A DNA stretch of 64,000 nucleotides from assembly GCA_002269645.1 (NCBI GenBank), contig NIVC01000263.1, forward strand, positions 1-64,000, written 5' to 3'. The notes below the pieces were generated by a model. The model searched no databases, was not told where the DNA came from, and saw only the letters and a list, made by a program, of their open reading frames with translations. Below, in pieces: positions 4,794 to 61,756 of this stretch; position 1 is the stretch's first letter; each line of letters opens with the position of its first letter. The translations under genes and the position numbers were made by a program. Source of the DNA: Macrostomum lignano. Lineage: Eukaryota.

Positions 4794-20535
<15,742 letters not shown>

Positions 20536-32470: not shown

Positions 32471-32508
32471 TGCATGACAGCAAACAGACGAGACACTACA
32501 GGTGGAAC

Positions 32509-36918: not shown

Positions 36919-39900
36919 TTATTTCTCAACATTCCTGTCAGCGTTTTTAGAAGGCGGCAACAGACAGCAAGTGCCATCAGACAGTACTTCAATGCCGGCG
37001 CGTTTCAGAGACGGCTGTTGCGGCAACACGTCCTTGCTAGCCAATCTACAGATGCAGATGGCAGCTGGCCATTCTGGTCCTGTCAGGTCCGGTGGCAACT
37101 CGCGAATGAAACTAGTCAGTAGGCCAGACGACACAAAGCCGTAGTCCACTGCCAAAACGGTGGCGGAGACCTCTTGAGAGTTCCGAGTATCGATGGACAG
37201 TACGCGACCGCGGTACCATTCACCACCACCATGGGATTTCATGGTGAAGAAAGCAACAGACTTTCCTGGGTACAACTTGGTTACAGGCTTGATAAGCAAG
37301 CCAAGCTTATTGTACCAGAAGTGCATGCGCTTAGCTAGCCGATCTACCTGCTGGAGAGACTGCGGCAGCAGGTGCACCATCAGTTGGCTGGAGTTTGATG
37401 ACGGCAGGATAATAACAGAGTAACGGCCTGGCAGCGGAACTGGTGTAGGCACAATGGTGCAACCATAATCATGTACCATACTAGCGAACACAGCACGCAA
37501 CTGATCTGGAGTGTACCGCAGTCGAGGTCTGTATTGCTGGTGCTGCCGCTTTTCTGCCTCGCTGTTGCAGGTGTTCGATTGTTTGGAGCAGTTGGTGATG
37601 GGTTGAAGACAGCAAACGGTGGCCAAAACTTCCGAGTTTTCTGGACGATCGCTACCTGATTCGTAACTCATTGGCGTCAATGGGACTTTGCACCAGCTTT
37701 TATGAAAATTTTCATTATTTTCCCCGTCGAAAAAGATACTCGTACTGGCTGGTAGCACGGCCGGTTTCAATTTGTTATTATTGATAGAAGCCAAAGATGC
37801 AGCAGAATTGGTGACTTCAGTGACTGTAAGAGACTGCAGAATGTCTTTTGGTATGCTGACCGTGGGCGGCTCAGAATCAGTTGACGGATCAATGCTGAAC
37901 TGCAACTCTCCATATTCGACGATCTTGTCGCAGGCGTCAGTAGTAAAGCAGCAATTATCGCTAGATTGCAGAATGCATTCGAAAGCAAAAGCATCTCGGT
38001 ACAACTCTTCACGCTGCGGCAAAACCTTCAACTGCAGCTCGTCTAGCGAGCCTTCCTCTTCGTTGCCATAGTCGATGAACAACACGCGAATCGAGTCGGA
38101 GCTGACAGCCTTTACCTCGGCTCGGTACCAGCTTCCTTCGAACAGGCCAATGCAGAACTGTCCTATCTGAGGTGCAGTCAAAGCCTCTGAGCTGGCTGCC
38201 TTAATATCTAGTTGGCTCTGTAAAGAAGCCAGATCATCTAGATCTCGGCTGCTCTGAATCCACAAGCGAAGACGTCTCGGATCGTCTTGAACTTGAATAG
38301 CGAAAACAACCATAGCGGAAACCAAGCCGAACAAATGTTTTTTGGAGACGCTCCATTTACACTGAGGGACAGAAATGCTGGAGGTAGTCGTATATGCTTC
38401 TTCTTTCATGTGAGCACAATTTTTATCTACATTATCATTAGTTATAGCACAAAACTCTGTAGATTCTTCTGCAGTGTTACTAGCGCACAAACTGTGTTGA
38501 GCAACGGGTCCTATAATCTGATTCACGCCAGGACAAGGCAGAATGCACTCGAAAGCAAATGATTCACAGTAAAGCTCCTCTTTGTAGGGCAAAGGTTTTA
38601 GTCTAAAAATACTAGGTGAGCCCTTCACTTCAATACCATAGTCCAGAAGAAACAATTCAATTGTCACTGAAGATGTGGCAAGAATCTCGGCACGGCACCA
38701 TTGGTCCTTGTGAAAAACAAGACAAGTCTGGCCAAGGCTCGGCTGTTTTAAATCTGACGCTGAATCAGCTTCAATTTTGAACAAGTCTTGCAGAGCCTTT
38801 AGCTTTACACTATCGCAGGTTCGATGAACCCAAAGGCGCAGATATTCCTTATTGTCACCAGTTGGGACACAAGCACACACAGTACCAGTAAAAGTGCCGG
38901 TAAGTTGACGTCGCTTTACTCGCCAAATTTTTGTACGAGAATCGTGCTCCATTATAGCATGCTGCGATGCATCTCTGACTTCTCGAATGTCATTGGTAGA
39001 TGAACTGACTGGAGCATCCTTTTGAGGCTCATCATAAGCAGCACTGATGGGTTCCAAACTGCAAATCCTCGATTCCAAAGCTGCCAGAAGGTCGGAGTCG
39101 ATACCAATAGTGCGTAATCCAGAAGAAAAATCTTGCAAAATGTTTACCGTAAGACAATCAAAGGCAGTGATTAAAGCATCAGCATTCGAAGTGAATCGGC
39201 ACTTGCTAGAAGATTCCAGAATACATTCGAATGCAAGAGCGTCTCGGTACAACCCTTCACGATGCGGCAAAACCTTCAACTGCAGCTCGTCTAGCGAACC
39301 TTCCTCTTCGTTGCCATAGTCGATGAACAACACGCGAATCGAGTCGGAGCTGACAGCCTTTACCTCGGCTCGGTACCAGCCGCCTTCAAACAGACCAATG
39401 CAGAACTGTCCTATCTGAGGTGCAGTCAATGCCTCTGAGCTGGCAGCCTCAACGTCGAGTTGGCTCTGCAAGGAAGCCAACTCATCCAGATCTCGGGTGT
39501 TCTGAATCCACAAGTGCAGCTTAGTACCATCATCTAGAAGCGTTGCGTTGCTTACAACTCCTGTGAATGTTCCGCTTTGGATGCTCTTCGAAACTGCCCA
39601 TGTCTCCGACTTATTGGCTTGTGATTCAATCTGTTGCTTCCCTAGCTCAATAACTACGGTATTGTTTGCGTTGGATGCAGCAGAATCCGTGACTTCAGTG
39701 ACTGTAAGAGACTGTAGAATGTTTTTGGGTATGCTGACCGTGGGCGGCTTAGAATCAGTTGACGGATCAATGCTGAACTGCAACTCTCCATACTCGACGA
39801 TCTTGTCGCAGGCGTCAGGACTAAAGCAGCGGTTGTCACTAGATTCAAGAATGCATTCGAAAGCAAAAGCATCTCGGTACAACTCTTCACGCTTCGGCAA

Positions 39901-40519
39901 AACCTTCAACTGCAGCTCGTCTAGCGAGCCTTCCTCTTCGTTGCCATAGTCGATGAACAACACGCGAATCGAGTCGGAGCTGACAGCCTTTACCTCGGCT
40001 CGGTACCAGCCGCCTTCGAACAGGCCAATGCAGAACTGTCCAGCCTTTGGCTTATCCAAAGCTTTACAGCTGTCAGCATCAGCGTCAAGCAGATTTTGTA
40101 ATGATGTCAGTTTATCAAAATCGCTGCTGTTTTGAACCCATAGGTGCAGGTTCTTCAAATCCTGAGTGGCAGAACTAACAACGCCTGTAAATGAATCAAT
40201 CCATTTTTGCTTTTTTATGAGGATATTATCTTCGTCAATTTCAAATTCCGAATGGATTAAATTTTGTTTTGCATCCAGCTCGAGGGCATTATTACTTTCA
40301 GTCCTAGTGAGACTCAATTGTTGATTATTTTCCACCAAAAAATCCATGATTTTTTTGTCAACCGAGACGACTGGTAGGTCAAAAATGATGTCACTTTGGA
40401 CAGTAAATTCTATTGGGCCCAGTTGCAGAAGTTGCTCAAAAGCATTGGCCACGAAATTCATCGTGACAGGGCAGGGGCTATTGCATTCGACTCTGCTTTT
40501 TCGTAAGTTCAGAGAATCA
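36919..40519 (-). CDS. Multi-Tudor (TDRD/Tudor-family) protein, single large exon, 5 extended Tudor domains
   Basis: Three CIGLFEG(G/S)WYRAEV...FIDYGNEE domains, one diverged (WCRAEI..LLDYG) and one C-terminal (WYRGRV..VDYG). Acceptor cttttttcag at 40520-21, first in-frame ATG at 40461, TAA at 36919. The true 5' end is uncertain. Confidence 0.88.
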
Positions 40520-41429
40520 CTGAAAAAAGTAGGAGAGGATGACAAATATATACTTTATATATATATTACAACGTAGCAAAATCACGATTACTCCTAAAAT
40601 GTTGCACCAAAACGCTAAGCGACACCGCGAAATACATAAATAACTACTGATGGCAAAAACATTCTATAACTTAAAAATAACTAAACATTCAAGGCCAAGC
40701 TCAGCTTAAAGATTGGTTTCCTACTCGTAAATACGAGGGTTGTACAAAAAGTTCTGTGTATTACATAACGACTTTAAAATGATAACCAGCAGACACAAAA
40801 CTTTAAACTTATCTTAGGCATCATTTCACTTAAAATATACACCCTCAGCCTCCATGCACTTCTGCCATCGCCACACGAGCCTCTCCTCAATTCTAGCACT
40901 AATGTCATTCTTTGTCATAGTTTCGATTCCCACCTCATATGCCTAGTTCAACTTATCTGAAACACTGGCCCTGCATTAAGTCCTTGATGCGGGAAAAGAG
41001 GAAGAAGTCGCATAGACTGAGGTCTGGCATGGGGGGCATGGCGGATGCGGAAGTACTTCCCACCCCCATGACTTGACGGCTGTCAGCACAATCTGCTTTA
41101 AATGAGGAGATGCATTGTCTTAAAGCAAAATTGGGCCCCCTCCCCAATTAGAGCCCCCTCCAATGATATGCATCATATTACTGCATCATATCGAAGATCT
41201 CAGTTGGCAAACAAACCTGCAGGACATGAAACTTGATCATGGCTCGCTCGCTGATCATGACCTTGTGCAACAAAGTCAGCCATGGGTGAAAGAGGAAAAT
41301 ATTCACTACACCATTTTATCCTCAATTTTGAACAAGGAGAATTTCGGAACTGACAAACTCCTCTTCAATATTGACAGATCAAGCTTCAGTTTTGACAAAC
41401 TCTGGTTCAATTTTGACAATGCACATTTA

Positions 41430-42725
41430 CGAGGGGTATTTCAGAAGTTCGTAGAAAGCCGGCTTTGCATAAAGCTATAGCCTTGAAACTTTTCACAAAT
41501 ACTATTTCATATATCTACAGCCTGCAGCTAAATTTTCAGCAAAATTGATTGAAATCGCCACCAGAAATCTGCGATCAAACTCTGAACCCCCTACTGTATT
41601 TCCTGCGTTCTCCAAAGAGCAGTCAAGAGCCATAATGCTGTTCCTGTTTCGTAGAGGCTCTAGCGCAAATGAAGCTGCTGCTGAGATGAGGACTGTACTG
41701 CAAGATGAAACACCATCCCTCAGCACTGTGCACAAGTGGTTTGGTCGCTTTAGAGCCGGCCATTTCGATCTGGCTGACAAGCCAAGAGAAGGTCGTCCAA
41801 GAACATCAACAGACTCCTTGAATGTGGCTGCTGTGCAGTCGGCGTTGAACGAGGATGCAAGACTGACGATCGAGAGGATGGAGGAGAGTCTGGGCATTGA
41901 GGCCACATCGATTTGGAGGATCTTGCACGAAGATCTTGGTGTCACTAAGAAAGCTGCCAAATGGGTGCCACGAATCCTCTCGCCTGAGCAGAAAATTGAT
42001 TTCTGCAGAAATTTCCTGGATCAGTTCAAAGATGGAGCATCTGCAAACTTCCAGAACATCGTAACAGGTGATGAAGCCTGGTTCCATCAGTACGACCCGC
42101 CAACTAAATCACAGTCGATGGTTTTGCCACTCAAAGGAGCCCCACCTCCCCAAAAGGCGAAGCGGGTGAGGTCAGGTGGGAAAATCATGTTCGCGATTTT
42201 CTTCTCGCCCAGAGGCATTGTGGCCTCAGTGCCAGTTGAGCAAGGCCGCACTGTGACCTCTGATTGGTATGTGACCAGCTGCTTGCCTGCTGTGTTCAAT
42301 TCCATCGCAGCTGGCCGTGGCAAAGCTGAGCTACGCGCTACTTCCTGCATCACGACAACGCACCTGCACACACAGCAAACAACACAGTGCAGCACATTCG
42401 TGCTTCTGGCATCAAGCTGCTGAGCGCTCCGCCTTATTCACCGGATCTGGCGCCGTGCGATTTCTGGTTATTTCCGAAAATCAAGCAGCCGCTGCGTGGA
42501 AAGTTGTTTGAGACTCGTGATGAGCTGATTTCTGCTGTGAATGAGCAGCTCAACTCCATTGAAAAAGCTGATTTTAGGGGTTGCTTTGATAGCTGGCTGC
42601 AGCGCATGCGAAAGTGCATAGAAATCGGTGGCGAGATCGGATTTAGATGATGATTATGTGTCGCAACCCGCTTTTTGATATCTGCTTGCTTTCTATCAGT
42701 TTCTACGAACTTGAAATACCCTTCG
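41430..42725 (+). mobile_element. Full-length (1296 bp) mariner element
   Basis: ~28-bp TIRs CGAGGGGTATTTCAGAAGTTCGTAGAAA / TTTCTACGAACTTGAAATACCCTTCG, TA flanks at 41428-29 and 42726-27. Confidence 0.92.
41545..42650 (+). pseudogene. Mariner D,D34D transposase with one frameshift
   Basis: HTH, WVPRIL, IVTGDEAW; frameshift near 42340 before FLHHDNAPAH; YSPDLAPCDFWLF. The second and third catalytic Asp are separated by 34 residues (counted manually). Confidence 0.9.
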
Positions 42726-42727
42726 TA

Positions 42728-43902
42728 GTCAACTTCTCCTGGGAGAATTCGGTAACAAAGTAATCCAATGAAAGCCTGAACGGGGCTGAAGTGAGCTGTG
42801 CAAAATCAGCTTATTCTGACTTTGCTTTTGGGATCTACAAGTATTGATAAAATTTAGGGGGGCCGTAGCCCAGCGGTAGCGCAGCTGCTCTGGTGTGCCA
42901 GCGACACAGGCTCGATTCCAAGTGCAGTCACATTAATTTGGGGCTGAATTGGAATCTCGGCTTGGCTCTGCTCGTGCAATTAACGGCCTTGAGAGCCAAC
43001 CGCCCAAGGCGCAGTGAAGTGTACATGCCTAACGATAATATAAAGTTAGGGCCGCTGTACACTCCTGTGTGAGTGTGTGCCTGCGTACGTATCCGCGCGC
43101 TTGTATGCCTGCTCAGGGGAGTCGGCGGAATGGGCAGTAATGCCTCTCGCCGGTTGTGTGCTTATGTCGCTTAAAGTGCGCCAGGGTGCACACAACCCCC
43201 TGCCTCTAATAAAAAAAATTGATAAAATTTATTTTTCTTCATCCTTTACACACAAACTAAAATAGCCTGACTGGTTGGGGCTGCTAAGTCTGATTCTATT
43301 TTGACAGAGTTGCTTCAAAACTGACACTTTATGGTTTGTGTACCCAAAAAGTCCGCTTCATTTTTGACAACTCCGAATCAATATTGAACAGTTTACAATC
43401 AATTTTTACTAAAAAACTTTTTGAAAAAGATTTTGACAATTTTGACTAAGAATCGTTTAGCTTGGAAATGTCGAGGCAGTCTTTTGTCTATGACAGTTTG
43501 TTTTTTGTCAAGTCTTGAGGCAGCCTGCGCCTCGAATCTAATTGGCTACTGCTTCAGTTTTTACCATCGAGGTTGGTCAGATCAACGTATGCACATCTTA
43601 CGTGCACAACGTAAACTGTTCAATATTGATTCGGAGTTGTCAAAAATGAAGCGGACTTTTTGGGTACACAAACCATAGAGTGTCAGTTTTGAAGCAACTC
43701 TGTCAAAATAGAATCAGACTTAGCAGCCCCAACCAGTCAGGCTATTTTAGTCTGTGTAAAGGATGGAGAAAAATAAATTTTATCAATACTTGTAGATCCC
43801 AAAAGCAAAGTCAAAATAAGCTGATTTTGCACAGCTCACTTCAGCCCCGTTCAGGCTTTCATTGGATTACTTTGTTACCGAATTCTCCCAGGAGAAGTTG
43901 AC
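42728..43902. mobile_element. Foldback/MITE with long inverted arms
   Basis: GTCAACTTCTCCTGGGAGAATTC ... GAATTCTCCCAGGAGAAGTTGAC; arms ~300 bp after removing the SINE; TA flanks at 42726-27 and 43903-04. Confidence 0.88.
42857..43217 (+). mobile_element. tRNA-derived SINE, copy 2
   Basis: Head GGGGGGCCGTAGCCCAGCGGTAG...GGCTCGATTCC, polyA tail, 14-bp TSD ATTGATAAAATTTA (42843-56 and 43218-31). Confidence 0.9.
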
Positions 43903-46420
43903 TAAACGTGCAATTTCAAAATTGAAGCTTGATTGTAGATTTGAGTGCCCGACCATAGAGTGTCAATATTGAAGAGGAGTCTGTCAGTTTCGAAGACGAG
44001 GGTAAAATGGTGTACGCAGGCTAAAATGATTTTAAGACGTAAAACTTCCATCAAAGTTATCAGCTCTTTACATACGAAATTGTCTATGGCGAAACCTATG
44101 CTTTGCCAGCTAGCTTTAAAACCAAGCTATGCCACAATATACAGAGCTTTTTGTACAACCCTCGTAGTATGCTCAGAGAATTGTCTTCGACGATGCTCAA
44201 TTTCGAGCTTAGGAAAGCCACCCTATCTAACTAGGGGCAAGAGCCAGGGATTACAGAAGTCGAAAAGCGTTGTCTCTGCTTCAGAAACCGGGTAAGCAAG
44301 CTACCTCATTACAAAACTGTTTCTAAAATGTCAGACTAAGAAAAGGAAATTAAAAGCTAGGTTAAAAAAATTTCACCCGACGCTATACGATTGCAATAAT
44401 AAGCACCAATTGTTTACAAACAATATAGGCTTGTATATTTGCCATAAAGATCGAGTTACAAACAGGTAATTAAAAATATTAGTATTTAGTTGAAACCAAC
44501 AGCAGACTAAAACCACAGAATGCAGCTACACTGAAGCCAACAAAATCGATTCGCACAAAATTAAGCCTTAAAGCTTCTTGCCTGATCGGGTTTTGAATCA
44601 TCTCCGCTCCTGCCGGGATGGTACGCAGTGCTTACCATAGTTATTCTTTTAGCAAAGAGAGACATTCCTATTCACAACTGAGCGTGCAGCGGATACATAG
44701 AACAGACAGAAGAGGACTGACTATGACGCTGTGACAACAATGAACATCGCTCGATTACCATAGACAACAGTTATGTTTATAGTCTACTGCTTGACTGTAC
44801 TATGTGGGGTACAATGGTACAGTCTTTTCTGTGTCTAATTTTTGTGAATCCCGCTGGGGCTTTAAAACTAAGGGGTGATTTGACCGAGGGGTGAGGTAAG
44901 ATCAAAGGGGTGAAAGCGAGTTAACTGAGAATATTTAGTCACAATGCCGACTATGCTATCCATAGAGGCGACTGCAAATGAGTAAAGTTTCAGCTTTAAA
45001 ATTTCATTTATCTTGCAAAAATATCAGATACTCCTGTATGGTCAGCAGGGCATACCATAGCCGGCAAGAACGGACATGGTAGGCGTGACCATAGACACGA
45101 AAGAGGCACAGGTCGGCAGCTAGAAGTGAAAGCGCGACGTTCAATAGTTTTATATTCGTTTCGATAGATTACCTAATTTCTGTGGAGCTATTTAGATTAG
45201 TGGCCTCAATAACAGCTGCAACATTGCGGCTCACAGAAGCGAAAATTGGCACTCGTAAATTAAACGTAAAGTTGCGAAAAATCAGCGACAGAAAATGCTT
45301 ATTGAATTCGTAAAGACTGCTAATGCAACGTTTTGAATAAACAAAAAATATTTAGGGAACGAATAATGAACAAAAGGCGTAAGAAAAAGGATGTAGATAG
45401 AAAGTTTTTGGGTGCCAAGTTTTTGCAGCACTTATTATTTTACTGTAGCAAATTGGTAGCTTCTTAGAAGTACATGTAACTTTCAGCATGCAGTGTAAAG
45501 TACGAAAGAGTCGAGATTAAAATAAATGCTTGGACTCTTGCCTTGACTATTTATTTTATAGCAAACATAATAACACTAAAGTTAACCCAGAGCAAGTAGC
45601 AACAAATTAACTTTAGAAAGAAGCCGATTGGCTCTAACGGAGATCCATATAATATTGGACCTAAAATAATAAGAATAAGCTTAAAAATAAGTGGACAGAA
45701 TGCATACTAGCACCCAGAAACAAACATAGCAACAAGAGATTACTAAACCATGAAAGAACACTAACAGGAAACAGTAACTAGAATATTAAATGCCTATAGA
45801 AGTATTATTAAAGATTTAGTATATTGTGATCAAACTTGTTTTAAACATTAGCATGTTAATTTTAAAGTCATCTTTCAATAACGATTGTTGTTTGGCCCCT
45901 AGTATTAAAAGTGCATTCGAACATTTCACCCGAAGGACTAAGGCTTACTGAAAAAATACTCGTATACAGGACAAAATAAAAATTTAAATACTACCCCAAG
46001 ACACACGCCCCTAGACCAAGTGTTTAAACTGTAGTCAAACTGTAAGTACGAGTACATTATTACTGGCTTGATGGAGCAGTTTAACCTGTGAATACAATTC
46101 AATCTACATTCACTACTTATTTGTACTAGCTAAAATCAATATTTTCAGACAACCTACACACTTTTGTAGTTACTCGAAACGATCTCGATTTTGTTGACGA
46201 ATTTAGGCACTATACTAGCCGTGACCAAAACACACTTTGATGCACCACATGCATCTAGAAGCCGGAAGAACAAATATAATTTCAAGCCCACTGTCGCTCC
46301 CTCATAGCAAAATATGAGACGATCCATAATAACTGGCAAAGCGACGCAACACCAAAAAACACGTACTTATGAAAGATTGCAGCAAAAAACAGCGTTAGTA
46401 AAAGTTCGTCTAAAGTGCAT

Positions 46421-49400
46421 TTAAGCAGAATATAAAAACTTCAGACACACGTCCGCTATGCTGGCTCGAGGGAGGCCCAATTCCAATAAACAATTAATGC
46501 TGAACTTCAACTCTCCGAATTCGATAATCTTGTCGCACGCTTCGGGACTAAAGCAGCGATTGTCGCTAGATTCAAGAATGCATTCAAAAGCAAAAGCATC
46601 TCGGTACAACTCTTCACGCTGCGGCAAAACCTTCAACTGCAGCTCGTCTAGCGAGCCTTCCTCTTCGTTGCCATAGTCGATGAACAACACGCGAATCGAG
46701 TCGGAGCTGACAGCTTTTACCTCGGCCCGATACCAGCCGCCTTCGAACAGACCAATGCAGAACTGTCCTATCTGAGGTGCAGTCAATGCCTCTGAGCTGG
46801 CAGCCTCAACGTCGAGTTGGCTCTGCAAGGAAGCCAACTCATCCAGATCTCGGCTGCTCTGAATCCACAAGTGCAGCTTAGTACCATCATCTGAGGGTGT
46901 AACGAGGCTTACAACTCCTGTGAATGTTCCGCTTTGGGTGCTCTTCGAAACTGCCCATGTCTCCGACTTATTGGCTTGTGATTCAATCTGTTGCTTCCCC
47001 GACTCAATAACTGCGGCACTGTCTGCGTTGGCTGCAGCAGCATCCGTGACTTCAATGACTGTAAGAGACTGCAGAATGTCTTTTGGTATGCTGACCGTGG
47101 GCGGCTCAGAATCAGTTGACGGATCAATGCTGAACTGCAACTCTCCATACTCGACGATCTTGTCGCAGGCGTCAGGACTAAAGCAGCGGTTGTCACTAGA
47201 TTTCAAAATGCATTCGAAAGCAAAAGCATCTCGGTACAACTCTTCACGCTGCGGCAAAACCTTCAACTGCAGCTCGTCTAGCGAGCCTTCCTCTTCGTTG
47301 CCATAGTCGATGAACAACACGCGAATCGAGTCGGAGCTGACAGCTTTTACCTCGGCCCGATACCAGCCGCCTTCGAACAGACCAATGCAGAACTGTCCTA
47401 TCTGAGGTGCAGTCAATGCCTCTGAGCTGGCAGCCTCAACGTCGAGTTGGCTCTGCAAGGAAGCCAACTCATCCAGATCTCGGCTGCTCTGAATCCACAA
47501 GTGCAGCTTAGTACCATCATCTGAGGGTGTAACGAGGCTTACAACTCCTGTGAATGTTCCGCTTTGGGTGCTCTTCGAAACTGCCCATGTCTCCGACTTA
47601 TTGGCTTGTGATTCAATCTGTTGCTTCCCCGACTCAATAACTGCGGCACTGTCTGCGTTGGCTGCAGCAGCATCCGTGACTTCAATGACTGTAAGAGACT
47701 GCAGAATGTCTTTTGGTATGCTGACCGTGGGCGGCTCAGAATCAGTTGACGGATCAATGCTGAACTGCAACTCTCCATACTCGACGATCTTGTCGCAGGC
47801 GTCAGTACTAAAGCAGCAATTATCGCTAGATTGCAGAATGCATTCGAAAGCAAAAACATCTCGGTACAACTCTTCACGCTGCGGCAAAACCTTCAACTGC
47901 AGCTCGTCTAGCGAGCCTTCCTCTTCGTTGCCATAGTCGATGAACAACACGCGAATCGAGTCGGAGCTGACAGCTTTTACCTCGGCCCGATACCAGCCGC
48001 CTTCGAACAGACCAATGCAGAACTGTCCTATCTGAGGTGCAGTCAATGCCTCTGAGCTGGCAGCCTCAACGTCGAGTTGGCTCTGCAAGGAAGCCAACTC
48101 ATCCAGATCTCGGCTGCTCTGAATCCACAAGTGCAGCTTAGTACCATCATCTGAGGGTGTAACGAGGCTTACAACTCCTGTGAATGTTCCGCTTTGGGTG
48201 CTCTTCGAAACTGCCCATGTCTCCGACTTATTGGCTTGTGATTCAATCTGTTGCTTCCCCGACTCAATAACTGCGGCACTGTCTGCGTTGGCTGCAGCAG
48301 CATCCGTGACTTCAATGACTGTAAGAGACTGCAGAATGTCTTTTGGTATGCTGACCGTGGGCGGCTCAGAATCAGTTGACGGATCAATGCTGAACTGCAA
48401 CTCTCCATACTCGACGATCTTGTCGCAGGCGTCAGTACTAAAGCAGCAATTATCGCTAGATTGCAGAATGCATTCGAAAGCAAAAACATCTCGGTACAAC
48501 TCTTCACGCTGCGGCAAAACCTTCAACTGCAGCTCGTCTAGCGAGCCTTCCTCTTCGTTGCCATAGTCGATGAACAACACGCGAATCGAGTCGGAGCTGA
48601 CAGCTTTTACCTCGGCCCGATACCAGCCGCCTTCGAACAGACCAATGCAGAACTGTCCTATCTGAGGTGCAGTCAATGCCTCTGAGCTGGCAGCCTCAAC
48701 GTCGAGTTGGCTCTGCAAGGAAGCCAACTCATCCAGATCTCGGCTGCTCTGAATCCACAAGTGCAGCTTAGTACCATCATCTGAGGGTGTAACGAGGCTT
48801 ACAACTCCTGTGAATGTTCCGCTTTGGGTGCTCTTCGAAACTGCCCATGTCTCCGACTTATTGGCTTGTGATTCAATCTGTTGCTTCCCCGACTCAATAA
48901 CTGCGGCACTGTCTGCGTTGGCTGCAGCAGCATCCGTGACTTCAATGACTGTAAGAGACTGCAGAATGTCTTTTGGTATGCTGACCGTGGGCGGCTCAGA
49001 ATCAGTTGACGGATCAATGCTGAACTGCAACTCTCCATACTCGACGATCTTGTCGCAGGCGTCAGTACTAAAGCAGCAATTATCGCTAGATTGCAGAATG
49101 CATTCGAAAGCAAAAACATCTCGGTACAACTCTTCACGCTGCGGCAAAACCTTCAACTGCAGCTCGTCTAGCGAGCCTTCCTCTTCGTTGCCATAGTCGA
49201 TGAACAACACGCGAATCGAGTCGGAGCTGACAGCTTTTACCTCGGCCCGATACCAGCCGCCTTCGAACAGACCAATGCAGAACTGTCCTATCTGAGGTGC
49301 AGTCAATGCCTCTGAGCTGGCAGCCTCAACGTCGAGTTGGCTCTGCAAGGAAGCCAACTCATCCAGATCTCGGCTGCTCTGAATCCACAAGTGCAGCTTA

Positions 49401-52400
49401 GTACCATCATCTGAGGGTGTAACGAGGCTTACAACTCCTGTGAATGTTCCGCTTTGGGTGCTCTTCGAAACTGCCCATGTCTCCGACTTATTGGCTTGTG
49501 ATTCAATCTGTTGCTTCCCCGACTCAATAACTGCGGCACTGTCTGCGTTGGCTGCAGCAGCATCCGTGACTTCAATGACTGTAAGAGACTGCAGAATGTC
49601 TTTTGGTATGCTGACCGTGGGCGGCTCAGAATCAGTTGACGGATCAATGCTGAACTGCAACTCTCCATACTCGACGATCTTGTCGCAGGCGTCAGTACTA
49701 AAGCAGCAATTATCGCTAGATTGCAGAATGCATTCGAAAGCAAAAGCATCTCGGTACAACTCTTCACGCTTCGGCAAAACCTTCAACTGCAGCTCGTCTA
49801 GCGAGCCTTCCTCTTCGTTGCCATAGTCGATGAACAACACGCGAATCGAGTCGGAGCTGACAGCTTTTACCTCGGCCCGATACCAGCCGCCTTCGAACAG
49901 ACCAATGCAGAACTGTCCTATCTGAGGTGCAGTCAATGCCTCTGAGCTGGCAGCCTCAACGTCGAGTTGGCTCTGCAAGGAAGCCAACTCATCCAGATCT
50001 CGGCTGCTCTGAATCCACAAGTGCAGCTTTCTATAATCTTTTAGAGGTGATGCATGGCTCACAACACTTTCGCTGGAACTAATGTAAGATTTTTTTGAAA
50101 CAATCCAATTCAACTCCATGCAATTTAAGAGGTGTTTGCTTTTACTGGATTTGACATGATCCGCATACAATTCGTTTGCATCATGTTTAGAATAAGCTTG
50201 TTGATAAGCAGTAGTTGGTAGTTTATGCAGACTAGTGAGAAAATCGTGCTTCTCAAACTGTAATCGGACCTTAATCGGGATAGAGTCCTTATCGACGACT
50301 TTGACGGACAGTTGTTTATTAAGAAGCTTTCTAAAACTCGTAATGGCCTCCTCTCTATAGAAGCGGAGGTCACAATCTGCAAGGCTGCAGTGAAGTGCAA
50401 ACGCGCTGCATTTTAAAGCCTCGTCGGATATACACCGCAAAAAGTCTTGTGGCACAAGAGCGATGTTTCCATAGTCCACGAACTTGACTACGTAGTGGGC
50501 GTTATCTAAATTGGCAATGAGCGCGGCACGGTACCAAGTAAAGTTTTCTGTATACATGGCAAGGCATGGTTGTCCAGCATGCAACTCTCCTTCCAGCTTA
50601 CATGATGATTTAGCGATTTCTTGGATTTTGGACATAGTAGTGCGTAAAAGCTCTACGTCTTCGTCCAGCAACAAGTAAAATGAACACAGATTTTCGATGT
50701 GCGTGATGTTGGCCAAGAATGAATCGTTAGGAGGTGACTTGGCTATGTAGGCAATGCTTAGCGGAGTTAGGCGGGTGTCGTAAGAACAAAATGAGCCTGA
50801 CAAAGCGCTGGTCGAGTTTGCTCGCTCAACTGAGATTTCGACACCGTTTGGATCAATAGTCAAACCATTTAAGTCAGCTGATAAAGCAACGCTCGCAGAG
50901 ATGACATCAGCTGAAACGGAATTAATCTTGATAATACAACAGGCGCCTGATAAAACAGAGCTAAGAGAGCTTTTTAGCAGCCTAAAGTCATTAATGTCTA
51001 CCTTTACACAACAGACAGGAATGTTGCAGATTTTATTGGAAGCAGCAAAAATGCTTGACATAGAAACAGTGTCAAGGGTGCCAAAGTCGACGGAGAAAAT
51101 GAGACATGTGTTGGTATCGTAGCTAACAGAGCGAATCAAGCCTCGGCAAAGGCAATTATTTTGCTTGAAAATAACTGGCGCACCGATTTTGAAAGTTGAG
51201 AGCAGCGACAGTTCGTTTAGTGAGTTGCTGTTTAAAACACTTGATACCATTTCAAGAATAGATTTGTCTTTGTCCAACTGAAAGTAGGCAGCGCCGGTGC
51301 CTTCAGTCGCGCAGCACACAGCAGAGTAAGAGCAACCTGCATTCAAACTGGTATAGTCGTATGGAACAAAGCTAAGTCCTTCTGAGTTTTCCAAAGATTG
51401 AACGTCATCTAAAACGCATTTGATTTCATTTTGAGATAACTGGCTGGTAGCACGAGAATTCGGATTGCCATTTGCGGTGTCAGCAGCCTTAAAAATGTTT
51501 CTGGTCTCAAGCCAGTCAGAGAGGCGCAATCCACTGTGGCATGGAATTATTTCGGCATAATTGCCTAGTGAATTAGAATCCTCTACTGGCGTCACAGAAA
51601 CAATAGCAGGAAATCCAATGAAGTTTCTTACTTCAGCTAAATGCTTTTCATTGAGCGGATTGTTGACTCGCTTGTCAATAAGGAAGGCTTTTGCCAAAGG
51701 AGCATACTGAAGCTGACTTGGAATCACAAAGCAATCAGTAACTTTAATGGTAGCGTTCGAACCATAATCCAGTAGATTAACTTGTAGGGCGTCATCAGAC
51801 CTCCCTAGAAGGCTTGCACGGTAGTATTTTCCACCAACTTCAACACCAAAGACGCTGGGAACATCCGAATGAGATGAAAATCGCACGTTAGCTAGAATTT
51901 CAAGCTGGCTCTCTAGCTGATGAAGTCTTTTGGCGTCAGATACTTTTTGAACAAAAATTAATCCGCTCGAGGATATGTGAGTTACGACTCCAAGATAGTT
52001 CACACCTGCGCTTGTGGTCATCTGAGTCATATTGGACTCTAAATCAAGGCTTTTAGTAGCAATTCCGAACCTAACGTTGATGGACTTGCAAGTTGTTCGA
52101 CTGCAAAGTTCCACCGGGACAAGAGATTCAACAGATTCAGAATCATCGGGGACGAAAACTGCCTGAAGAACGTCGGTACCTTGAGAGCTCATCTCCGTCC
52201 ACAAGCGTTGGCACTCGTCAGGTTTCCAACCTCCGTCTGGTTCCTTGATTAATCGTAGTTTGCAATGCACTGCTTGCTTGTTTAACGCCTTGAATTCTTC
52301 TGGCAGAAGAAACAATGACTGAATGGGGACATTGATGGTCTCACCAGAGTCTACAAGCAAAATCCTATAATAGTCGGATGATTCAGAAGCAAGCACTTGG

Positions 52401-52630
52401 CCGCGATAAACATTTTCTGAATTAATCACTGCGACGAAGTCCGAAGTTTTGACTTTAGCTATTGGCTTTAAAAGTCCTTCGCTATGGAGAGAAGTCAACT
52501 CAGAAGTCAATTTTTGCAATGATCGACTATCATCATCTTTTAGCTGTAGCCAGAAATCAGTGGGGCTTGTGAATTGCGAACAGCACACAGCCCTCTCAGT
52601 AGCTGTATCAAGACGTATAGCAGGTTGCAT
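46421..52630 (-). CDS. Multi-Tudor (TDRD6/Tudor-like) protein, 2069 aa, 10 extended Tudor domains, single exon
   Basis: Four diverged N-terminal eTud domains followed by six near-identical copies. Acceptor cttttttcag 8 nt upstream of ATG 52630; TAA at 46421. Confidence 0.92.
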   Translation of the reverse strand: MQPAIRLDTATERAVCCSQFTSPTDFWLQLKDDDSRSLQKLTSELTSLHSEGLLKPIAKVKTSDFVAVINSENVYRGQVLASESSDYYRILLVDSGETINVPIQSLFLLPEEFKALNKQAVHCKLRLIKEPDGGWKPDECQRLWTEMSSQGTDVLQAVFVPDDSESVESLVPVELCSRTTCKSINVRFGIATKSLDLESNMTQMTTSAGVNYLGVVTHISSSGLIFVQKVSDAKRLHQLESQLEILANVRFSSHSDVPSVFGVEVGGKYYRASLLGRSDDALQVNLLDYGSNATIKVTDCFVIPSQLQYAPLAKAFLIDKRVNNPLNEKHLAEVRNFIGFPAIVSVTPVEDSNSLGNYAEIIPCHSGLRLSDWLETRNIFKAADTANGNPNSRATSQLSQNEIKCVLDDVQSLENSEGLSFVPYDYTSLNAGCSYSAVCCATEGTGAAYFQLDKDKSILEMVSSVLNSNSLNELSLLSTFKIGAPVIFKQNNCLCRGLIRSVSYDTNTCLIFSVDFGTLDTVSMSSIFAASNKICNIPVCCVKVDINDFRLLKSSLSSVLSGACCIIKINSVSADVISASVALSADLNGLTIDPNGVEISVERANSTSALSGSFCSYDTRLTPLSIAYIAKSPPNDSFLANITHIENLCSFYLLLDEDVELLRTTMSKIQEIAKSSCKLEGELHAGQPCLAMYTENFTWYRAALIANLDNAHYVVKFVDYGNIALVPQDFLRCISDEALKCSAFALHCSLADCDLRFYREEAITSFRKLLNKQLSVKVVDKDSIPIKVRLQFEKHDFLTSLHKLPTTAYQQAYSKHDANELYADHVKSSKSKHLLNCMELNWIVSKKSYISSSESVVSHASPLKDYRKLHLWIQSSRDLDELASLQSQLDVEAASSEALTAPQIGQFCIGLFEGGWYRAEVKAVSSDSIRVLFIDYGNEEEGSLDELQLKVLPKREELYRDAFAFECILQSSDNCCFSTDACDKIVEYGELQFSIDPSTDSEPPTVSIPKDILQSLTVIEVTDAAAANADSAAVIESGKQQIESQANKSETWAVSKSTQSGTFTGVVSLVTPSDDGTKLHLWIQSSRDLDELASLQSQLDVEAASSEALTAPQIGQFCIGLFEGGWYRAEVKAVSSDSIRVLFIDYGNEEEGSLDELQLKVLPQREELYRDVFAFECILQSSDNCCFSTDACDKIVEYGELQFSIDPSTDSEPPTVSIPKDILQSLTVIEVTDAAAANADSAAVIESGKQQIESQANKSETWAVSKSTQSGTFTGVVSLVTPSDDGTKLHLWIQSSRDLDELASLQSQLDVEAASSEALTAPQIGQFCIGLFEGGWYRAEVKAVSSDSIRVLFIDYGNEEEGSLDELQLKVLPQREELYRDVFAFECILQSSDNCCFSTDACDKIVEYGELQFSIDPSTDSEPPTVSIPKDILQSLTVIEVTDAAAANADSAAVIESGKQQIESQANKSETWAVSKSTQSGTFTGVVSLVTPSDDGTKLHLWIQSSRDLDELASLQSQLDVEAASSEALTAPQIGQFCIGLFEGGWYRAEVKAVSSDSIRVLFIDYGNEEEGSLDELQLKVLPQREELYRDVFAFECILQSSDNCCFSTDACDKIVEYGELQFSIDPSTDSEPPTVSIPKDILQSLTVIEVTDAAAANADSAAVIESGKQQIESQANKSETWAVSKSTQSGTFTGVVSLVTPSDDGTKLHLWIQSSRDLDELASLQSQLDVEAASSEALTAPQIGQFCIGLFEGGWYRAEVKAVSSDSIRVLFIDYGNEEEGSLDELQLKVLPQREELYRDAFAFECILKSSDNRCFSPDACDKIVEYGELQFSIDPSTDSEPPTVSIPKDILQSLTVIEVTDAAAANADSAAVIESGKQQIESQANKSETWAVSKSTQSGTFTGVVSLVTPSDDGTKLHLWIQSSRDLDELASLQSQLDVEAASSEALTAPQIGQFCIGLFEGGWYRAEVKAVSSDSIRVLFIDYGNEEEGSLDELQLKVLPQREELYRDAFAFECILESSDNRCFSPEACDKIIEFGELKFSINCLLELGLPRASIADVCLKFLYSA
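46560..50030 (-). repeat. 630-bp coding tandem repeat (210 aa, one Tudor domain per unit)
   Basis: The anchor GAATCCACAAGTGCAGCTT recurs at 46861, 47491, 48121, 48751, 49381 and 50011. Confidence 0.97.
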
Positions 52631-53888
52631 GCAGATACCTGAAAAAAGAAGCTATTATTTAAATACAAGTAACTTTTTCTTTACAAGAATTATAAAGTTA
52701 TTATAGCCCTGAACACAAATCAAGGTATACTTAGGTTGACTAATCAATTTGTTTGAGTGAGCTTGCCTCTAGTAGTTCTTGACAGTAGTCAGTAGTCAGC
52801 AGACAGTAGTTCACCCTCAAAATTGAACATTTTCTATAGTAAAGTTATACAATAATTTGACTGTTGCTGACTTAAGTCAGCTGTGACAAACTGTAGGTGT
52901 CAATGTAGAAACTTATAGGCTTTATGTCAGAGATAGGCTGGGTAATAAAAATGAAAAGTCCCTTTTAATCTAGTTAGCCAATAGAGTTAAAGCCATAGAT
53001 TAATTGGAGAGGCACTACTTATTTTTGTTCAGAAAATTAGGATTCTGCATTATTTTTTTCTACATACATTCCCTATATCCACTATTATAAAAATGCATAG
53101 CACAGCTCAAGTCTGCTTTATGAGTCTATTTTATCATCTTTGTTACATATATTATAACACAATCAACTAAGAAAGACAAAATAAACTTGAAGAATCAATG
53201 AGCCAAGCTGAGCATTTTAATGATTTTTGCATAGGACATGTGCAATTATATGTAAAATAAAAAAACAAGATATAATGCTAATTTTTTAAACAAAAAGCTT
53301 TACGAATATCAATAGAGCTATAAGAAGGGCACAACATATCAAAAGATGAACATTTAGTCTGCCTCTTATTGAAAGTAATAAGAATTTATTGTTTTTCTGG
53401 CAATAACAATTTGTTGAAAAATAATATTATTTTTCTATAATGCATTAAACCAGCCCTATAATTATATTTTTTTAAATGTAGTTTCCTAACTTTCTACTTT
53501 AGTAGTCCTTGATTGAATGGTCTTCAATTTGTGAATAGAGGAGCTAGACTCTAATTTACAAGTCAATATTTGAATAAACTTAGTTACAAGTATAAGCCTG
53601 AACTTAAATGATATATACAAGAAATTTTAGATCTAAGTTAAGATACACTTAAGGAAAAGAGAGCTTAAGCACAAAATAGATTTAATATTATAGCGGCTTT
53701 AGCTAAAAACTTTGAAACATTTCAACAGCATTCCTAATGAATGCTTTATAATTATTGACTAATGTATATCTGACTATAAACTTAATATTCTTGAGGCCAT
53801 GCACATAAAAGCTTTGTCCCCCAACCTCAACACTCAACTCCAACATAGTTCTCAATGTTCTCCATAGTTCTCTATGTTTTCCATCATA

Positions 53889-60300: not shown

Positions 60301-61756
60301 GAAAACAAACATTAACTTTTTTATTTTCTTTTATTTAATGGCCAATGTATTTTTACCCTTATAGGTCTGAGGTCATCCTTAGGGCAGTTATGAAATTGAA
60401 AATTATATTAACTGTCGAATAAATATACCTGTAATTAGTTGAATAAACTATATAAATTACATGTACATAGTTTTCAATTAAAACAAGTTCTAACAAATAG
60501 TGCAATAGCCACATAGCGTATACTCCAAGCTAAAACATGCTGAGTAGGTGGCTAGCACATCCCATACCATAGCTATTCATTAATGAATGAAATTCATTAA
60601 TTTTTAATTTAATTTATTTTAAATTTAACTTTAGCATGCAAAAATTTCACTAAATTAAATATAACTATAAGCCTACATTGTTTTTAATTGAAACAAGTAA
60701 GACTAACAAATGATGCAATAGTATACACTTTAAGCTAAAACATGCTGAGTAGATGGCTAGCATATCCTACAGCTAGCTGGCTAGCAGTTTAGGTTTCTGT
60801 TTTGATCTTTGATATATATAGCCTCTAATATGTTCAGTATGCTCATGGTGGTAGGAATTGATAATCTTAAATAAATCAATAGGTTTGTTGTTAGGCCTAC
60901 AGCATAAGTTGCATACAAGAAGGTGCTCTTATATAGCAGATCTTTTGGTCCAGTGCTCCTTGACCTTAATGTACAAGTATTGCTTAGTTTTTCTATGAAT
61001 GAAATTTATAAATGACACCTGCATTAAAAGGCGGAGGCACATGGTGGGACTTCAAGTTGCAGACATACTGGGACACCTTCTCCATGCAAAATATGATCCT
61101 AAGCTAAATGTTAAAGCCTTTTTGAATAGTTTTTCAACTCTTTTCTTGAACTCAGAGCATAGGCCAAAAAACAGCAACATAATCTTAGTGCTTTTAGTTT
61201 CTCTAGCATTATCCTCCTGAGTGCTCTATTGATTAGTCAGTTTGTTTTTTAAAAACTGGTTAACAATGCGAAATACATAGGTAACAATTTCCAATAAGAT
61301 AGCCATTGATGGCCTAGTAATTTAATTTATTTTTATCTCTTAATGTACAATTATAGACTTTGACTGTACTAAACCCATTTGCCTATTGCCCTGTACAATT
61401 TTTGATTTGCTTTATTTAAATATATGGAATTGTAAACCATGTGTGCAAGCTCTGTAGATGACCACTTGTGTTGAAATGTGAGGGTTCCCCGACAGATATT
61501 CGCGACAGATATTTTCTCCTTCAAACGGATAATTCAAACAAAAAATGAATTTATGTTTCGGGATGCATTACTTACTCTGACGCCGTATTCAGCTTAAAAT
61601 TTTGTAGACAAAAATTTTATGTCTTAAAGAAAAAAATATTAGTACGAATACAAAGTGTGTCAAAACGAATTTTATCGCACATTCTTTACAAAAAATTCTC
61701 ACGCCAAAGAACTTATGAAGTAACGGTAGCAATGAATTTTTTGTCAGTTTCTGACG

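What the first reader, a model, noticed from the sequence alone, without database searches (positions are those of the whole stretch)
46560..50030. Recent six-fold amplification of one intact methyl-arginine-reading Tudor module
Seen: six 630-bp in-frame copies, the middle ones apparently identical. Each carries the full aromatic cage (F in CIGLF, Y in WYR, F in LFID, Y and N in DYGN). N-terminal domains 1-3 have degenerate cages; only domain 4 is also intact. Established: extended Tudor domains bind symmetric dimethyl-arginine on PIWI/Vasa-type proteins and scaffold germ granules. Inference: the valency of a piRNA-pathway or condensate scaffold is being tuned by a coding macro-repeat, possibly with copy-number polymorphism between individuals.
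Basis: partly seen in the sequence, partly recalled or inferred. Interest (0 to 1): 0.75.

Follow-up and report, generated by a model that had tools for sequence, protein, structure and literature searches.

The report
Amplified Tudor modules in flatworm gene
A germ-granule-type scaffold gene of the flatworm Macrostomum lignano carries a very young tandem array of near-identical methyl-arginine-reading Tudor modules, six in this copy and seven in a sister copy of the same genome, so the number of binding sites of this scaffold is changing now.

Summary
On the minus strand, ORF 46421-52630 (2069 aa) holds six in-frame copies of a 630-bp unit. Units 2-4 are identical, unit 1 differs by 2 nt and unit 5 by 8 nt. 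Unit 6 loses homology after about 390 nt and ends in a stop. Every unit has the F/Y/F/Y/N cage, aligns to the SND1 extended Tudor domain, and models as an extended Tudor plus a disordered linker of about 35 aa.

The window is Macrostomum lignano, assembly Mlig_3_7, contig NIVC01000263.1. The gene is a Tudor/TDRD6-class multi-Tudor protein.

- Three more copies of the same core lie 6 kb downstream in a second ORF (36919-40545), beyond a transposon-filled spacer.
- A homeologous locus in the same assembly has seven units. Its internal units are identical to each other but carry locus-specific variants, while the edge units match by position. The array therefore predates the homeolog split and has since turned over by unequal crossing-over.
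- Mosaic identity tracts show the same core overwriting older domains by gene conversion.

Still open: sDMA binding, any germline role, polymorphism between individuals, whether the two ORFs form one mRNA, and confirmation of the unit count by reads. I rate it a new variant of a known kind, of moderate interest.

The parts
46421..52630 (-). ORF1, 2069 aa. It runs from ATG 52630-52628 to TAA 46423-46421 and encodes ten Tudor domains (D1-D4 and U1-U6).
   Evidence: Pfam PF00567, 10 stretches, E=3.5e-145. It is part of the annotated model PAA86802.1 / BOX15_Mlig002131g2.
52639..52650 (-). Acceptor-like site ttcttttttcag, 8 nt upstream of the ATG. The annotated partial CDS starts just after it at 52636. 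It may be an SL trans-splice acceptor or a cis acceptor.
   Evidence: That the site is used is inferred, not shown.
52253..52534 (-). Tudor domain D1, degenerate cage (N-Y-L-S-E).
51704..51958 (-). Tudor domain D2, degenerate cage (E-Y-L-Y-S).
51050..51286 (-). Tudor domain D3, degenerate cage (Q-C-S-F-T).
50261..50665 (-). Tudor domain D4, unique sequence, intact cage (Y-Y-F-Y-N).
46527..50034 (-). High-identity tandem array, period 630 nt, 5.57 periods.
49400..50029 (-). Unit U1, the edge unit. It differs by 2 nt from the internal units and is positionally orthologous to unit 1 of the homeolog.
47510..49399 (-). Units U2, U3 and U4: three units of 630 nt, 100% identical to each other.
46880..47509 (-). 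Unit U5, the penultimate unit. It differs by 8 nt from the internal units, seven of them clustered at unit positions 303-333. Several are shared with U6, like a conversion tract.
46421..46879 (-). Unit U6, the last and partial unit. It has a full Tudor core. Homology decays after unit position about 290-390, and a private tail ...INCLLELGLPRASIADVCLKFLYSA precedes the stop. It is identical over 630 nt to the last unit of the homeolog.
46447..46448 (-). Weak GT, phase-compatible with the downstream acceptor. The UniProt gene prediction A0A1I8H6A6 uses it as donor. It is a candidate donor only.
40546..46420 (.). 5.9-kb non-coding spacer or putative intron between ORF1 and ORF2. It is conserved at about 98% in the homeologs.
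41545..42423 (+). Mos1/mariner-type transposase remnant inside the spacer.
   Evidence: HTH_48 E=5e-15, Transposase_1
42711..43919 (.). Nested inverted repeats (146-147-nt arms, 95-99% complementary). This is a foldback or MITE-like insertion in the spacer.
40520..40532 (-). Strong acceptor-like site ctacttttttcag, with the exon starting at 40519. In homeolog contig L002 the annotated transcript-based CDS starts 4 nt after the same site.
36919..40545 (-). ORF2, 1208 codons open. It holds an orphan C-terminal half of an extended Tudor, units A, B, C and D', and a C-terminal Tudor. It is either the 3' exon of the same gene or a separate cistron.
40336..40506 (-). Orphan half-domain, matching unit positions 93-149 only, old and diverged.
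39523..40152 (-). Unit A. The first 135 nt or so are old and diverged (62-73% identity). The rest is 87-100% identical to the master unit. The cage is intact.
38893..39522 (-). Unit B. The first 270 nt or so are 93-100% identical to the master unit and the rest is unrelated. The cage is intact.
38275..38844 (-). Domain C, an old Tudor domain that was not converted. Its cage is degenerate (H-C-L-Y-I).
37645..38274 (-). Unit D'. It is 82-100% identical to the master unit to about position 450, then unrelated. The cage is intact.
37084..37236 (-). C-terminal Tudor core, degenerate cage (H-Y-A-Y-F).

Best explanation
The locus is a Tudor/TDRD6-class multi-Tudor scaffold gene of the neopolyploid flatworm Macrostomum lignano. 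One extended-Tudor module with a complete methyl-arginine cage is being multiplied and spread within it by DNA recombination.

Each 630-bp unit (210 codons, so any unit-to-unit exchange stays in frame) encodes a complete extended Tudor fold and a disordered Ala/Ser/Gln-rich linker of about 35 residues (pLDDT below 50 at 155-188).

Unequal crossing-over between units changes the unit number (six here, seven in a homeolog) and keeps the internal units identical. The edge units escape and stay positionally orthologous. Gene conversion has pasted the same core over parts of three older domains further downstream. As a result, 9 of about 15 Tudor domains at the locus now carry the same intact cage.

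Inferred function: each intact module binds a symmetrically dimethylated arginine in the RG/RA-rich tails of PIWI, Vasa or Sm-type proteins. The protein then acts as a multivalent scaffold of nuage or chromatoid-body-type granules, and unit number sets its valency.

Shown: the repeat anatomy, the fold and cage by homology, the 6-versus-7 difference, the concerted-evolution pattern and the mosaic tracts. Inferred: ligand, cellular role and any selective value of valency.
For: Repeat anatomy.

Domain identity:
- Pfam TUDOR, 10 stretches in ORF1 and 5 in ORF2.
- Unit versus SND1 extended Tudor, E=8e-9 over residues 2-119, with cage columns matched.
- Cage table.
- AlphaFold model with pLDDT 83-96 over residues 1-154 and a disordered segment at 155-188.
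- Best Foldseek matches in the PDB are sDMA-peptide complexes of TDRD1 eTD3, SND1 and Drosophila Tudor eTud11.

Family: the best named relatives are 'maternal protein tudor' and 'TDRD6'.

Organism and locus: the window equals NIVC01000263.1 positions 1-64000.

Homeolog comparison:
- NIVC01000266.1 has seven units in a 2280-aa ORF.
- Its units 2-5 are identical to each other and differ from the window's internal units by 4 nt. First and last units match by position.
- Unique N-terminal CDS diverges by 1.31% and ORF2 by 1.9-2.0%. This fits the published S/L1/L2 subgenome divergence of 1.4-2.4% (PMC10733133).

Conversion: mosaic tracts in units A, B and D'.

Unusualness: in 18 relatives the maximum identity between domains of one protein is 34-50%.

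Unit count: a second annotation, UniProt A0A1I8H6A6, shows the same six units.
Against: - No reads were examined. Mlig_3_7 and ML2 were built from the same PacBio reads. Mlig_3_7 was polished with Pilon using multi-mapping short reads (PMC5730564), which can make repeat units look more alike. Unit U5 differs at three residues between the two annotations.
- The third homeolog contig breaks 0.5 kb from the array, so arrays do trouble the assembler.
- Divergence between homeologs inside the array (0-0.6%) is lower than in the flanks. This could be cross-polishing rather than biology.
- There are no expression, localisation or binding data for this gene. Searching for its three gene identifiers found no paper.
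- The homeolog's ORF2 carries a 4-nt frameshift, and the rough dN/dS in the unique part is about 0.4. With three homeologs, some copies may be decaying.
Confidence: 0.72

Rival explanations
1. Assembly artefact. The array, or its exact unit number and perfect identity, comes from mis-assembly of a repeat in a neopolyploid genome and from short-read polishing.
For: - Mlig_3_7 has only about 64% error-free bases by REAPR and was polished with Pilon.
- 93% of read pairs map to several loci.
- A homeolog contig ends 0.5 kb from the array.
- U5 differs between two annotations built from the same reads.
Against: - Two contigs carry arrays with the same edge units but different, internally consistent diagnostic variants and different counts.
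- Two assemblers give six units for this homeolog.
- The array is 3.5-4.2 kb. It should be spanned by single PacBio reads at the reported 130x coverage, although the read-length distribution was not checked.
- The reading frame is intact through 6.2 kb.
Confidence: 0.1
2. An old, fixed architecture kept uniform by gene conversion alone. The units are ancient domains and no recent gain of units occurred.
For: - Mosaic tracts in A, B and D' show that conversion operates at this locus.
- Edge units are orthologous between homeologs, so an array existed before the split.
Against: - Six versus seven units needs at least one unequal exchange since the split.
- Whole 630-bp units, including the disordered linker, are identical, not only the cores.
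- Relatives never exceed 50% identity between domains.
Confidence: 0.1
3. A decaying redundant copy. After whole-genome duplication this homeolog is drifting, and the array is neutral repeat instability in a gene that no longer matters. ORF1 may be cut off from its original 3' half by transposon insertion.
For: - ORF1 ends in a stop just after U6.
- A 5.9-kb spacer with mariner and foldback remnants follows.
- No strong in-phase donor was found.
- The homeolog's ORF2 has a frameshift.
- There are 19 non-synonymous against 15 synonymous codon changes in the unique part.
Against: - A 6.2-kb and a 3.6-kb ORF are both intact here, and the 3.6-kb ORF is also intact in contig L002.
- The spacer predates the homeolog split and is conserved.
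- Transcript-based annotation covers the locus.
- All nine converted cores keep the cage.
Confidence: 0.08

Closest known systems
Drosophila Tudor and vertebrate TDRD6 (multi-Tudor germ-granule scaffolds)
   Same: - The protein is made almost only of extended Tudor domains: 10 in ORF1 and about 15 with ORF2, against 11 in Tudor and 7-8 in TDRD6 (counts for the known proteins are from my own knowledge).
- The best named database relatives are 'maternal protein tudor' and 'TDRD6'.
- The unit model superposes on Tudor eTud11 bound to Aubergine sDMA peptides.
- It mixes domains with intact and degenerate cages.
   Different: In those proteins, and in 18 relatives tested here, domains of one protein are at most 34-50% identical. 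Here nine domains share a core that is 93-100% identical, three to four whole units are identical at the DNA level, and unit number differs between homeologs.
SND1 / Tudor-SN and TDRD1 extended Tudor domains (structurally solved sDMA readers)
   Same: - Same fold: a Tudor barrel inserted in an SN-like domain.
- Same five cage positions.
- Sequence E=8e-9 to SND1. Foldseek E about 1e-7, TM about 0.55, rmsd 2.8-3.0 A over about 158 columns.
   Different: Only 22-26% identity. The third cage residue is F here and Y in SND1. Ligand binding was not tested.
Coding macrosatellites with whole-domain units, such as the LPA kringle IV-2 repeat, PRDM9 zinc-finger arrays and mucin or ubiquitin arrays (from my own knowledge)
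   Same: - In-frame tandem units that each encode a whole domain.
- Internal units homogenised and edge units divergent.
- Unit number changed by unequal exchange.
   Different: Polymorphism between individuals is documented for those arrays and not shown here. The domain type (an sDMA reader in a condensate scaffold) is, as far as my limited searches show, not described as such an array.
Sponge 'maternal protein tudor-like' proteins (for example Dysidea avara, 3557 aa)
   Same: They are the highest-scoring non-Macrostomum relatives and have 17-18 Tudor domains, so a count of about 15 is not exceptional.
   Different: Their domains are old paralogues, with median identity about 35% and maximum 48-50%.

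Membership tests
Extended Tudor (eTud, sDMA-reading) domain | Tudor beta-barrel core recognised by the family profile | tested here: met
   Pfam PF00567 scores 476 bits with 10 stretches in ORF1 and 186 bits with 5 stretches in ORF2.
Extended Tudor (eTud, sDMA-reading) domain | SN-like (OB-fold) flanks around the Tudor core, forming one extended domain | tested here: met
   The SND1 alignment covers unit residues 2-119. The AlphaFold model has pLDDT 83-96 over residues 1-154. The top 25 Foldseek PDB matches are all extended Tudor structures.
Extended Tudor (eTud, sDMA-reading) domain | Four aromatic cage residues plus the Asn of the D-Y-G-N motif | tested here: met
   F45, Y50, F66, Y69 and N71 are present in U1-U6, A, B and D'. 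D4 has Y-Y-F-Y-N. D1-D3, C and the C-terminal domain fail this test.
Extended Tudor (eTud, sDMA-reading) domain | Preferential binding of symmetrically dimethylated arginine peptides | not testable with these tools
   This needs ITC or fluorescence polarisation with a recombinant unit.
Tudor/TDRD6 orthology group | Many eTud domains and no other domain type (no LOTUS, RING, KH, helicase or MYND) | tested here: met
   Only Tudor-clan families pass their own cut-off with a proper stretch. The other Pfam rows have 0 significant stretches.
Tudor/TDRD6 orthology group | Orthology shown by phylogeny or reciprocal best hits | tested here: inconclusive
   The best named hits are 'maternal protein tudor' and 'TDRD6' at 21-27% identity. 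No tree or reciprocal search was done. Apart from other Macrostomum lignano gene models, the closest representative in the 1.84-billion-protein library is 28-32% identical.
Tudor/TDRD6 orthology group | Germline or stem-cell expression and localisation to germ granules | not testable with these tools
   No paper mentions the three gene identifiers.
Coding tandem macro-repeat with variable unit number | Head-to-tail in-frame units, each a whole domain | tested here: met
   Spacing is exactly 630 nt, or 210 codons, within one ORF.
Coding tandem macro-repeat with variable unit number | Concerted evolution: internal units more alike within a locus than between loci, and edge units orthologous | tested here: met
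   Unit difference matrix.
Coding tandem macro-repeat with variable unit number | Unit number varies between alleles or individuals | not testable with these tools
   Only a difference between homeologs of one inbred line is shown, six versus seven. Population data are needed.

The most novel reading that the evidence does not exclude
One fully competent sDMA-reading module is sweeping through a multi-Tudor scaffold by duplication and gene conversion. It replaces older, cage-degenerate or divergent domains and gives homeologs, and possibly individuals, scaffolds of different valency. This would be adaptive tuning of germ-granule or piRNA-pathway condensation in a transposon-rich neopolyploid (about 75% repeats). 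It would also be a natural allelic series of scaffold valency in a transgenesis-ready animal.
Probability: 0.2. Interest if true: 0.7.

Novelty: new variant of a known kind. Interest (0 to 1): 0.45.

Why it matters
Multi-Tudor proteins are textbook multivalent scaffolds of germ granules. How many competent binding modules such a scaffold needs has mostly been studied by engineered truncations.

This locus offers a natural series. There are 6 versus 7 identical modules in the array, and 9 versus 10 copies of the shared core at the two loci. The organism allows RNAi and transgenesis. The locus also shows two ways in which the valency of such a scaffold can change on a very short time scale: unequal crossing-over, and gene conversion over older domains.

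There is a practical point as well. The deposited gene models for this locus and its homeolog (PAA86802.1 and PAA86760.1) skip repeat units in register and probably under-report the protein. Short-read transcriptomes will collapse this gene.

Tried and rejected
I replaced it with lag autocorrelation and the repeat finder.
- An exact look-up of the ORF1 product found no gene on record.
- A third word-index protein search with the non-repeat N-terminus, meant to find the third homeolog's array, returned nothing, even though known models contain that sequence. The third homeolog's unit number stays unknown. Its contig L002 starts 0.5 kb after the array.
- The full-library HMMER search found no close orthologue from another species. 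After the M. lignano models, the next hits are 28-32% identical. The sister-species test could not be run.
- A paper search for Mlig002131, Mlig022547 and Mlig033634 gave 0 papers. A search for described intragenic Tudor duplications found nothing relevant.
- I looked for a convincing splice donor linking U6 to the strong acceptor at 40520. Only weak phase-compatible GTs exist, at 46448, 46610 and 46607.
- I rejected the annotated 'introns' (46621 to 39895 and 39264 to 38017) as evidence of splicing. They join repeat units in register. They can look canonical only because the unit contains AAG|GT. This is what BLAT mapping of repeat-collapsed de novo transcripts would produce.
- I rejected the Pfam rows Herpes_V23, PUA_4, DUF5374 and similar. 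They have 0 significant stretches, and their whole-protein score is inflated by summing over repeats.
- A tRNA-like stretch in the spacer was not called by ARAGORN.

Full report
**1. The observation**

The repeat is real. Identity of the sequence to itself at a shift of 630 nt is 0.98-1.00 from about 46581 to 49400, and about 0.25 outside. The high-identity array runs from 46527 to 50034, which is 3508 nt or 5.57 periods. The repeat finder reports six copies spaced exactly 630 nt apart. Tandem Repeats Finder reported nothing only because its longest period is 500.

The array lies on the minus strand inside one uninterrupted ORF, 46421-52630, of 2069 aa. Since 630 nt is 210 codons, all copies are in frame.

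| Unit | Window coordinates | Relation to the internal units |
|---|---|---|
| U1 | 49400-50029 | differs by 2 nt |
| U2, U3, U4 | 47510-49399 | identical to each other |
| U5 | 46880-47509 | differs by 8 nt, seven of them at unit positions 303-333 |
| U6 | 46421-46879 | matches U5 exactly over the first 292 nt, then decays to background by about position 390 and ends in TAA |

**2. The domains**

Pfam finds ten Tudor stretches in the ORF (E=3.5e-145). One unit aligns to the extended Tudor domain of human SND1 over residues 2-119 (E=8e-9). In that alignment F45 (CIGLF), Y50 (WYR), F66 (LFID), Y69 and N71 (DYGN) fall on the columns that form the SND1 cage. From my own knowledge of the SND1-PIWIL1 structures, those are F740, Y746, Y763, Y766 and N768.

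A profile alignment of all domains gives the following cages:

| Domain | Cage residues |
|---|---|
| D1 | N-Y-L-S-E |
| D2 | E-Y-L-Y-S |
| D3 | Q-C-S-F-T |
| D4 | Y-Y-F-Y-N |
| U1-U6 | F-Y-F-Y-N |

An AlphaFold model of one unit, built from a 17-row alignment, has these features:
- pLDDT is 83-96 for residues 1-154.
- Residues 155-188 form a disordered Ala/Ser/Gln-rich stretch with pLDDT below 50.
- A short strand at 195-201 is probably the leading SN-like strand of the next module.

The best PDB matches are extended Tudor domains in complex with sDMA peptides: TDRD1 eTD3 with MILI, SND1 with PIWIL1 or E2F, and Drosophila Tudor eTud11 with Aubergine. E is about 1e-7, TM about 0.55 and rmsd 2.8-3.0 A.

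**3. Whose gene it is**

The ORF is 99% identical to PAA86802.1 (BOX15_Mlig002131g2) of Macrostomum lignano. The reverse complement of the fetched locus equals window 26919-62636, and the locus record coordinates are the same numbers. So the window is positions 1-64000 of contig NIVC01000263.1 of assembly Mlig_3_7.

The next-best named relatives are 'maternal protein tudor' of sponges and insects and 'TDRD6' of vertebrates, at 21-27% identity. No other domain type is present. I therefore file the gene as a Tudor/TDRD6-class multi-Tudor protein. Orthology was not tested by a tree.

**4.

A second minus-strand ORF, 36919-40545 (1208 codons), lies 5.9 kb downstream. It contains, in order:
- an orphan C-terminal half of an extended Tudor;
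- units A, B and D', which carry the same core and the same intact cage;
- one old, unconverted domain C (H-C-L-Y-I);
- a C-terminal Tudor with a degenerate cage.

The window therefore holds nine copies of the core, not six.

Identity to the master unit is mosaic:
- A is 62-73% identical for its first 135 nt or so and 87-100% afterwards.
- B is 93-100% identical for about 270 nt and unrelated afterwards.
- D' is 82-100% identical to about position 450.

That is the footprint of gene-conversion tracts laid over older, different domains.

The spacer 40546-46420 holds a Mos1/mariner transposase remnant and nested inverted repeats.

**5. Comparison within the genome**

M. lignano DV1 carries three subgenomes (S, L1, L2) that differ by about 1.4-2.4% in SNPs (PMC10733133). 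Two further contigs of the same assembly are syntenic with the window and have the same G-gamma genes downstream.

Contig NIVC01000266.1 is colinear with the window locus at about 98% identity, spacer included. There the first ORF is 2280 aa and has seven units.

The unit-by-unit difference matrix is the key result:
- In that locus, units 2-5 are identical to one another.
- They differ from the window's internal units by 4 nt per 630. The variants are locus-specific (SS to NT, G to E).
- The first units of the two loci match each other.
- The last units are identical over all 630 nt.
- The penultimate units are partly alike.

For comparison, the unique N-terminal coding part differs by 1.31% (34 of 2601 nt, with 15 synonymous and 19 non-synonymous codon changes). 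ORF2 differs by 1.9-2.0%.

The conclusions are as follows. An array with at least first, internal, penultimate and last units existed before the homeologs diverged. The internal units have since been duplicated or homogenised independently in each locus. At least one unequal exchange changed the number, giving six versus seven.

There are zero differences among three (here) or four (homeolog) whole units. That puts these events at well under a tenth to an eighth of the homeolog divergence. The rough Poisson upper bound is 0.16-0.24% divergence.

The third contig (NIVC01004554.1) begins 0.5 kb after the array, so its unit number is unknown.

**6. Is this unusual for the family?**

In 18 relatives with 3-18 Tudor domains each, the most similar pair of domains inside one protein is 34-50% identical. 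Here the figure is 98-100%. A total of about 15 domains is not unusual, since sponge proteins have 17-18.

**7. How far the assembly can be trusted**

I could not look at reads. Mlig_3_7 was built with Canu from the same PacBio reads as the older ML2 assembly, and polished with Pilon using Illumina and RNA-seq reads (PMC5730564). Polishing with multi-mapping reads could make units look more alike than they are. It could also explain why divergence between homeologs inside the array (0-0.6%) is below that of the flanks.

On the other side, a second annotation of the species, UniProt A0A1I8H6A6, is colinear with ORF1 residues 602-2061. From my own knowledge, accessions of this series come from the ML2-based WormBase ParaSite gene set. 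It shows the same six units and differs at only three residues, all in U5.

So the count of six is reproduced by a different assembler, while base-level detail inside the array is not fully stable. I put the chance that the whole array is an artefact at about 5% or less, and the chance that a count is off by one at roughly 15-20%.

**8. Gene structure is unresolved**

The deposited models for this locus (2580 aa) and for the homeolog (2787 aa) join ORF1 to ORF2 through two 'introns' that connect repeat units in register. Here these run from 46621 to 39895 and from 39264 to 38017. Such junctions can look canonical because the unit contains AAG|GT. They are what BLAT mapping of repeat-collapsed de novo transcripts would give. 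I do not accept them as evidence of splicing.

Independent hints:
- A strong acceptor-like site (ctacttttttcag, AG at 40521-40520) precedes ORF2.
- On contig L002 the transcript-based CDS starts 4 nt after the same site.
- No strong phase-compatible donor exists in U6. The weak candidates are GT at 46448, which the UniProt prediction uses, and GT at 46610 and 46607.
- About 7% of M. lignano transcripts are polycistronic and resolved by SL trans-splicing.

Three readings remain open:
- one mRNA encoding about 15 Tudor domains;
- two cistrons, of 2069 aa and about 1180 aa (the latter starting at M of MNFVANAF, 40461);
- isoforms that skip units.

The central finding does not depend on which is right.

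**9. Mechanism**

*Shown.* The array consists of an in-frame 630-bp unit that encodes an eTud module plus a flexible linker. It evolves by unequal crossing-over, with homogeneous interior units, orthologous edges and six versus seven copies. The core also spreads by gene conversion, seen as mosaic tracts.

*Inferred from the family.* Each intact cage binds one sDMA in the N-terminal RG/RA repeats of PIWI-clade, Vasa or Sm proteins. The protein would then be a multivalent scaffold of nuage or chromatoid-body granules, and unit number would set the number of competent binding sites:
- 7 in ORF1 here (D4 plus six units);
- 8 in the homeolog;
- up to 10 or 11 if ORF2 is part of the same protein.

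Whether the change in valency is selected or is neutral repeat instability in a redundant polyploid gene is open. A rough dN/dS of about 0.4 in the unique part, and a 4-nt frameshift in the homeolog's ORF2, leave room for relaxed constraint.

**10. Verdict**

- Supported: a young, dynamic array of intact eTud modules.
- Refined: the array is older than the homeolog split, its interior has turned over since, and conversion also acts at a distance.
- Not tested: polymorphism between individuals, sDMA binding and a germ-granule role.

This is a new variant of a known kind: a multi-Tudor scaffold that behaves like a coding macrosatellite. Interest is moderate.

Noticed in passing
window 46621-39895 and 39264-38017 (model PAA86802.1); L003 (model PAA86760.1): Both deposited gene models jump between repeat units in register and drop one or more units, the spacer, and part of ORF2. 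This looks like an artefact of mapping repeat-collapsed de novo transcripts, so the deposited proteins (2580 and 2787 aa) are probably wrong in unit number.
   Followed up: partly
L003 about 23640 (NIVC01000266.1), equivalent to window about 39545: The homeolog lacks 4 nt at a CAACGCAACGC slippage site between units A and B. Unit spacing is 626 instead of 630, which frameshifts its ORF2. ORF2 is intact in the window and in contig L002. This is either real decay of one homeolog or an assembly indel.
   Followed up: partly
window 46250-46879 versus L003 16391-17020: The last unit plus the 170 nt beyond the stop is 630/630 identical between homeologs whose flanks differ by 1.1-2%. The whole array is less diverged between homeologs (0-0.6%, apart from the penultimate unit at about 1.1%) than the unique parts. 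Possible causes are inter-homeolog conversion or cross-polishing by Pilon. Not resolved.
   Followed up: partly
L002 position 1 (NIVC01004554.1), equivalent to window about 45915: The third homeolog contig starts 0.5 kb downstream of where the array should end. The assembler seems to have broken at the array, so that homeolog's unit number is unknown.
   Followed up: partly
window 41545-42423 (+) and 42711-43919: The spacer holds a Mos1/mariner transposase remnant (HTH_48, Transposase_1) and a nested foldback with arms of 146-147 nt that are 95-99% complementary. The UniProt prediction A0A1I8H6A6 even turns the antisense of the transposase (41861-41630) into an exon.
   Followed up: partly
window 1600-35000: The window has a very high density of minisatellites. 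Examples are a 21-nt unit x158 at 8859-12105, 20-nt units at 13330-14639 and 15522-16263, a 23-nt unit x30 at 24950-25647 and a 35-nt unit x29 at 31466-32471. They also create the long overlapping pseudo-ORFs on both strands at 13-26 kb, which have no Pfam match.
   Followed up: partly
window 31354-32782 and 27894-28094 (+): Two annotated G-protein gamma subunit genes (PF00631) lie downstream of the Tudor gene and are conserved in all three homeologous contigs. The 35-nt minisatellite at 31466-32471 lies inside the span of the first gene.
   Followed up: no
window 61752-62591: A 187-bp tandem repeat, 4.5 copies, 97% identical.
   Followed up: no
tool behaviour: The word-index protein search missed UniProt A0A1I8H6A6 (99% identical over 1460 aa). 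In one search it returned nothing for the non-repeat N-terminus, although PAA86802.1 contains it. Absence of hits from that tool is therefore weak evidence here.
   Followed up: no
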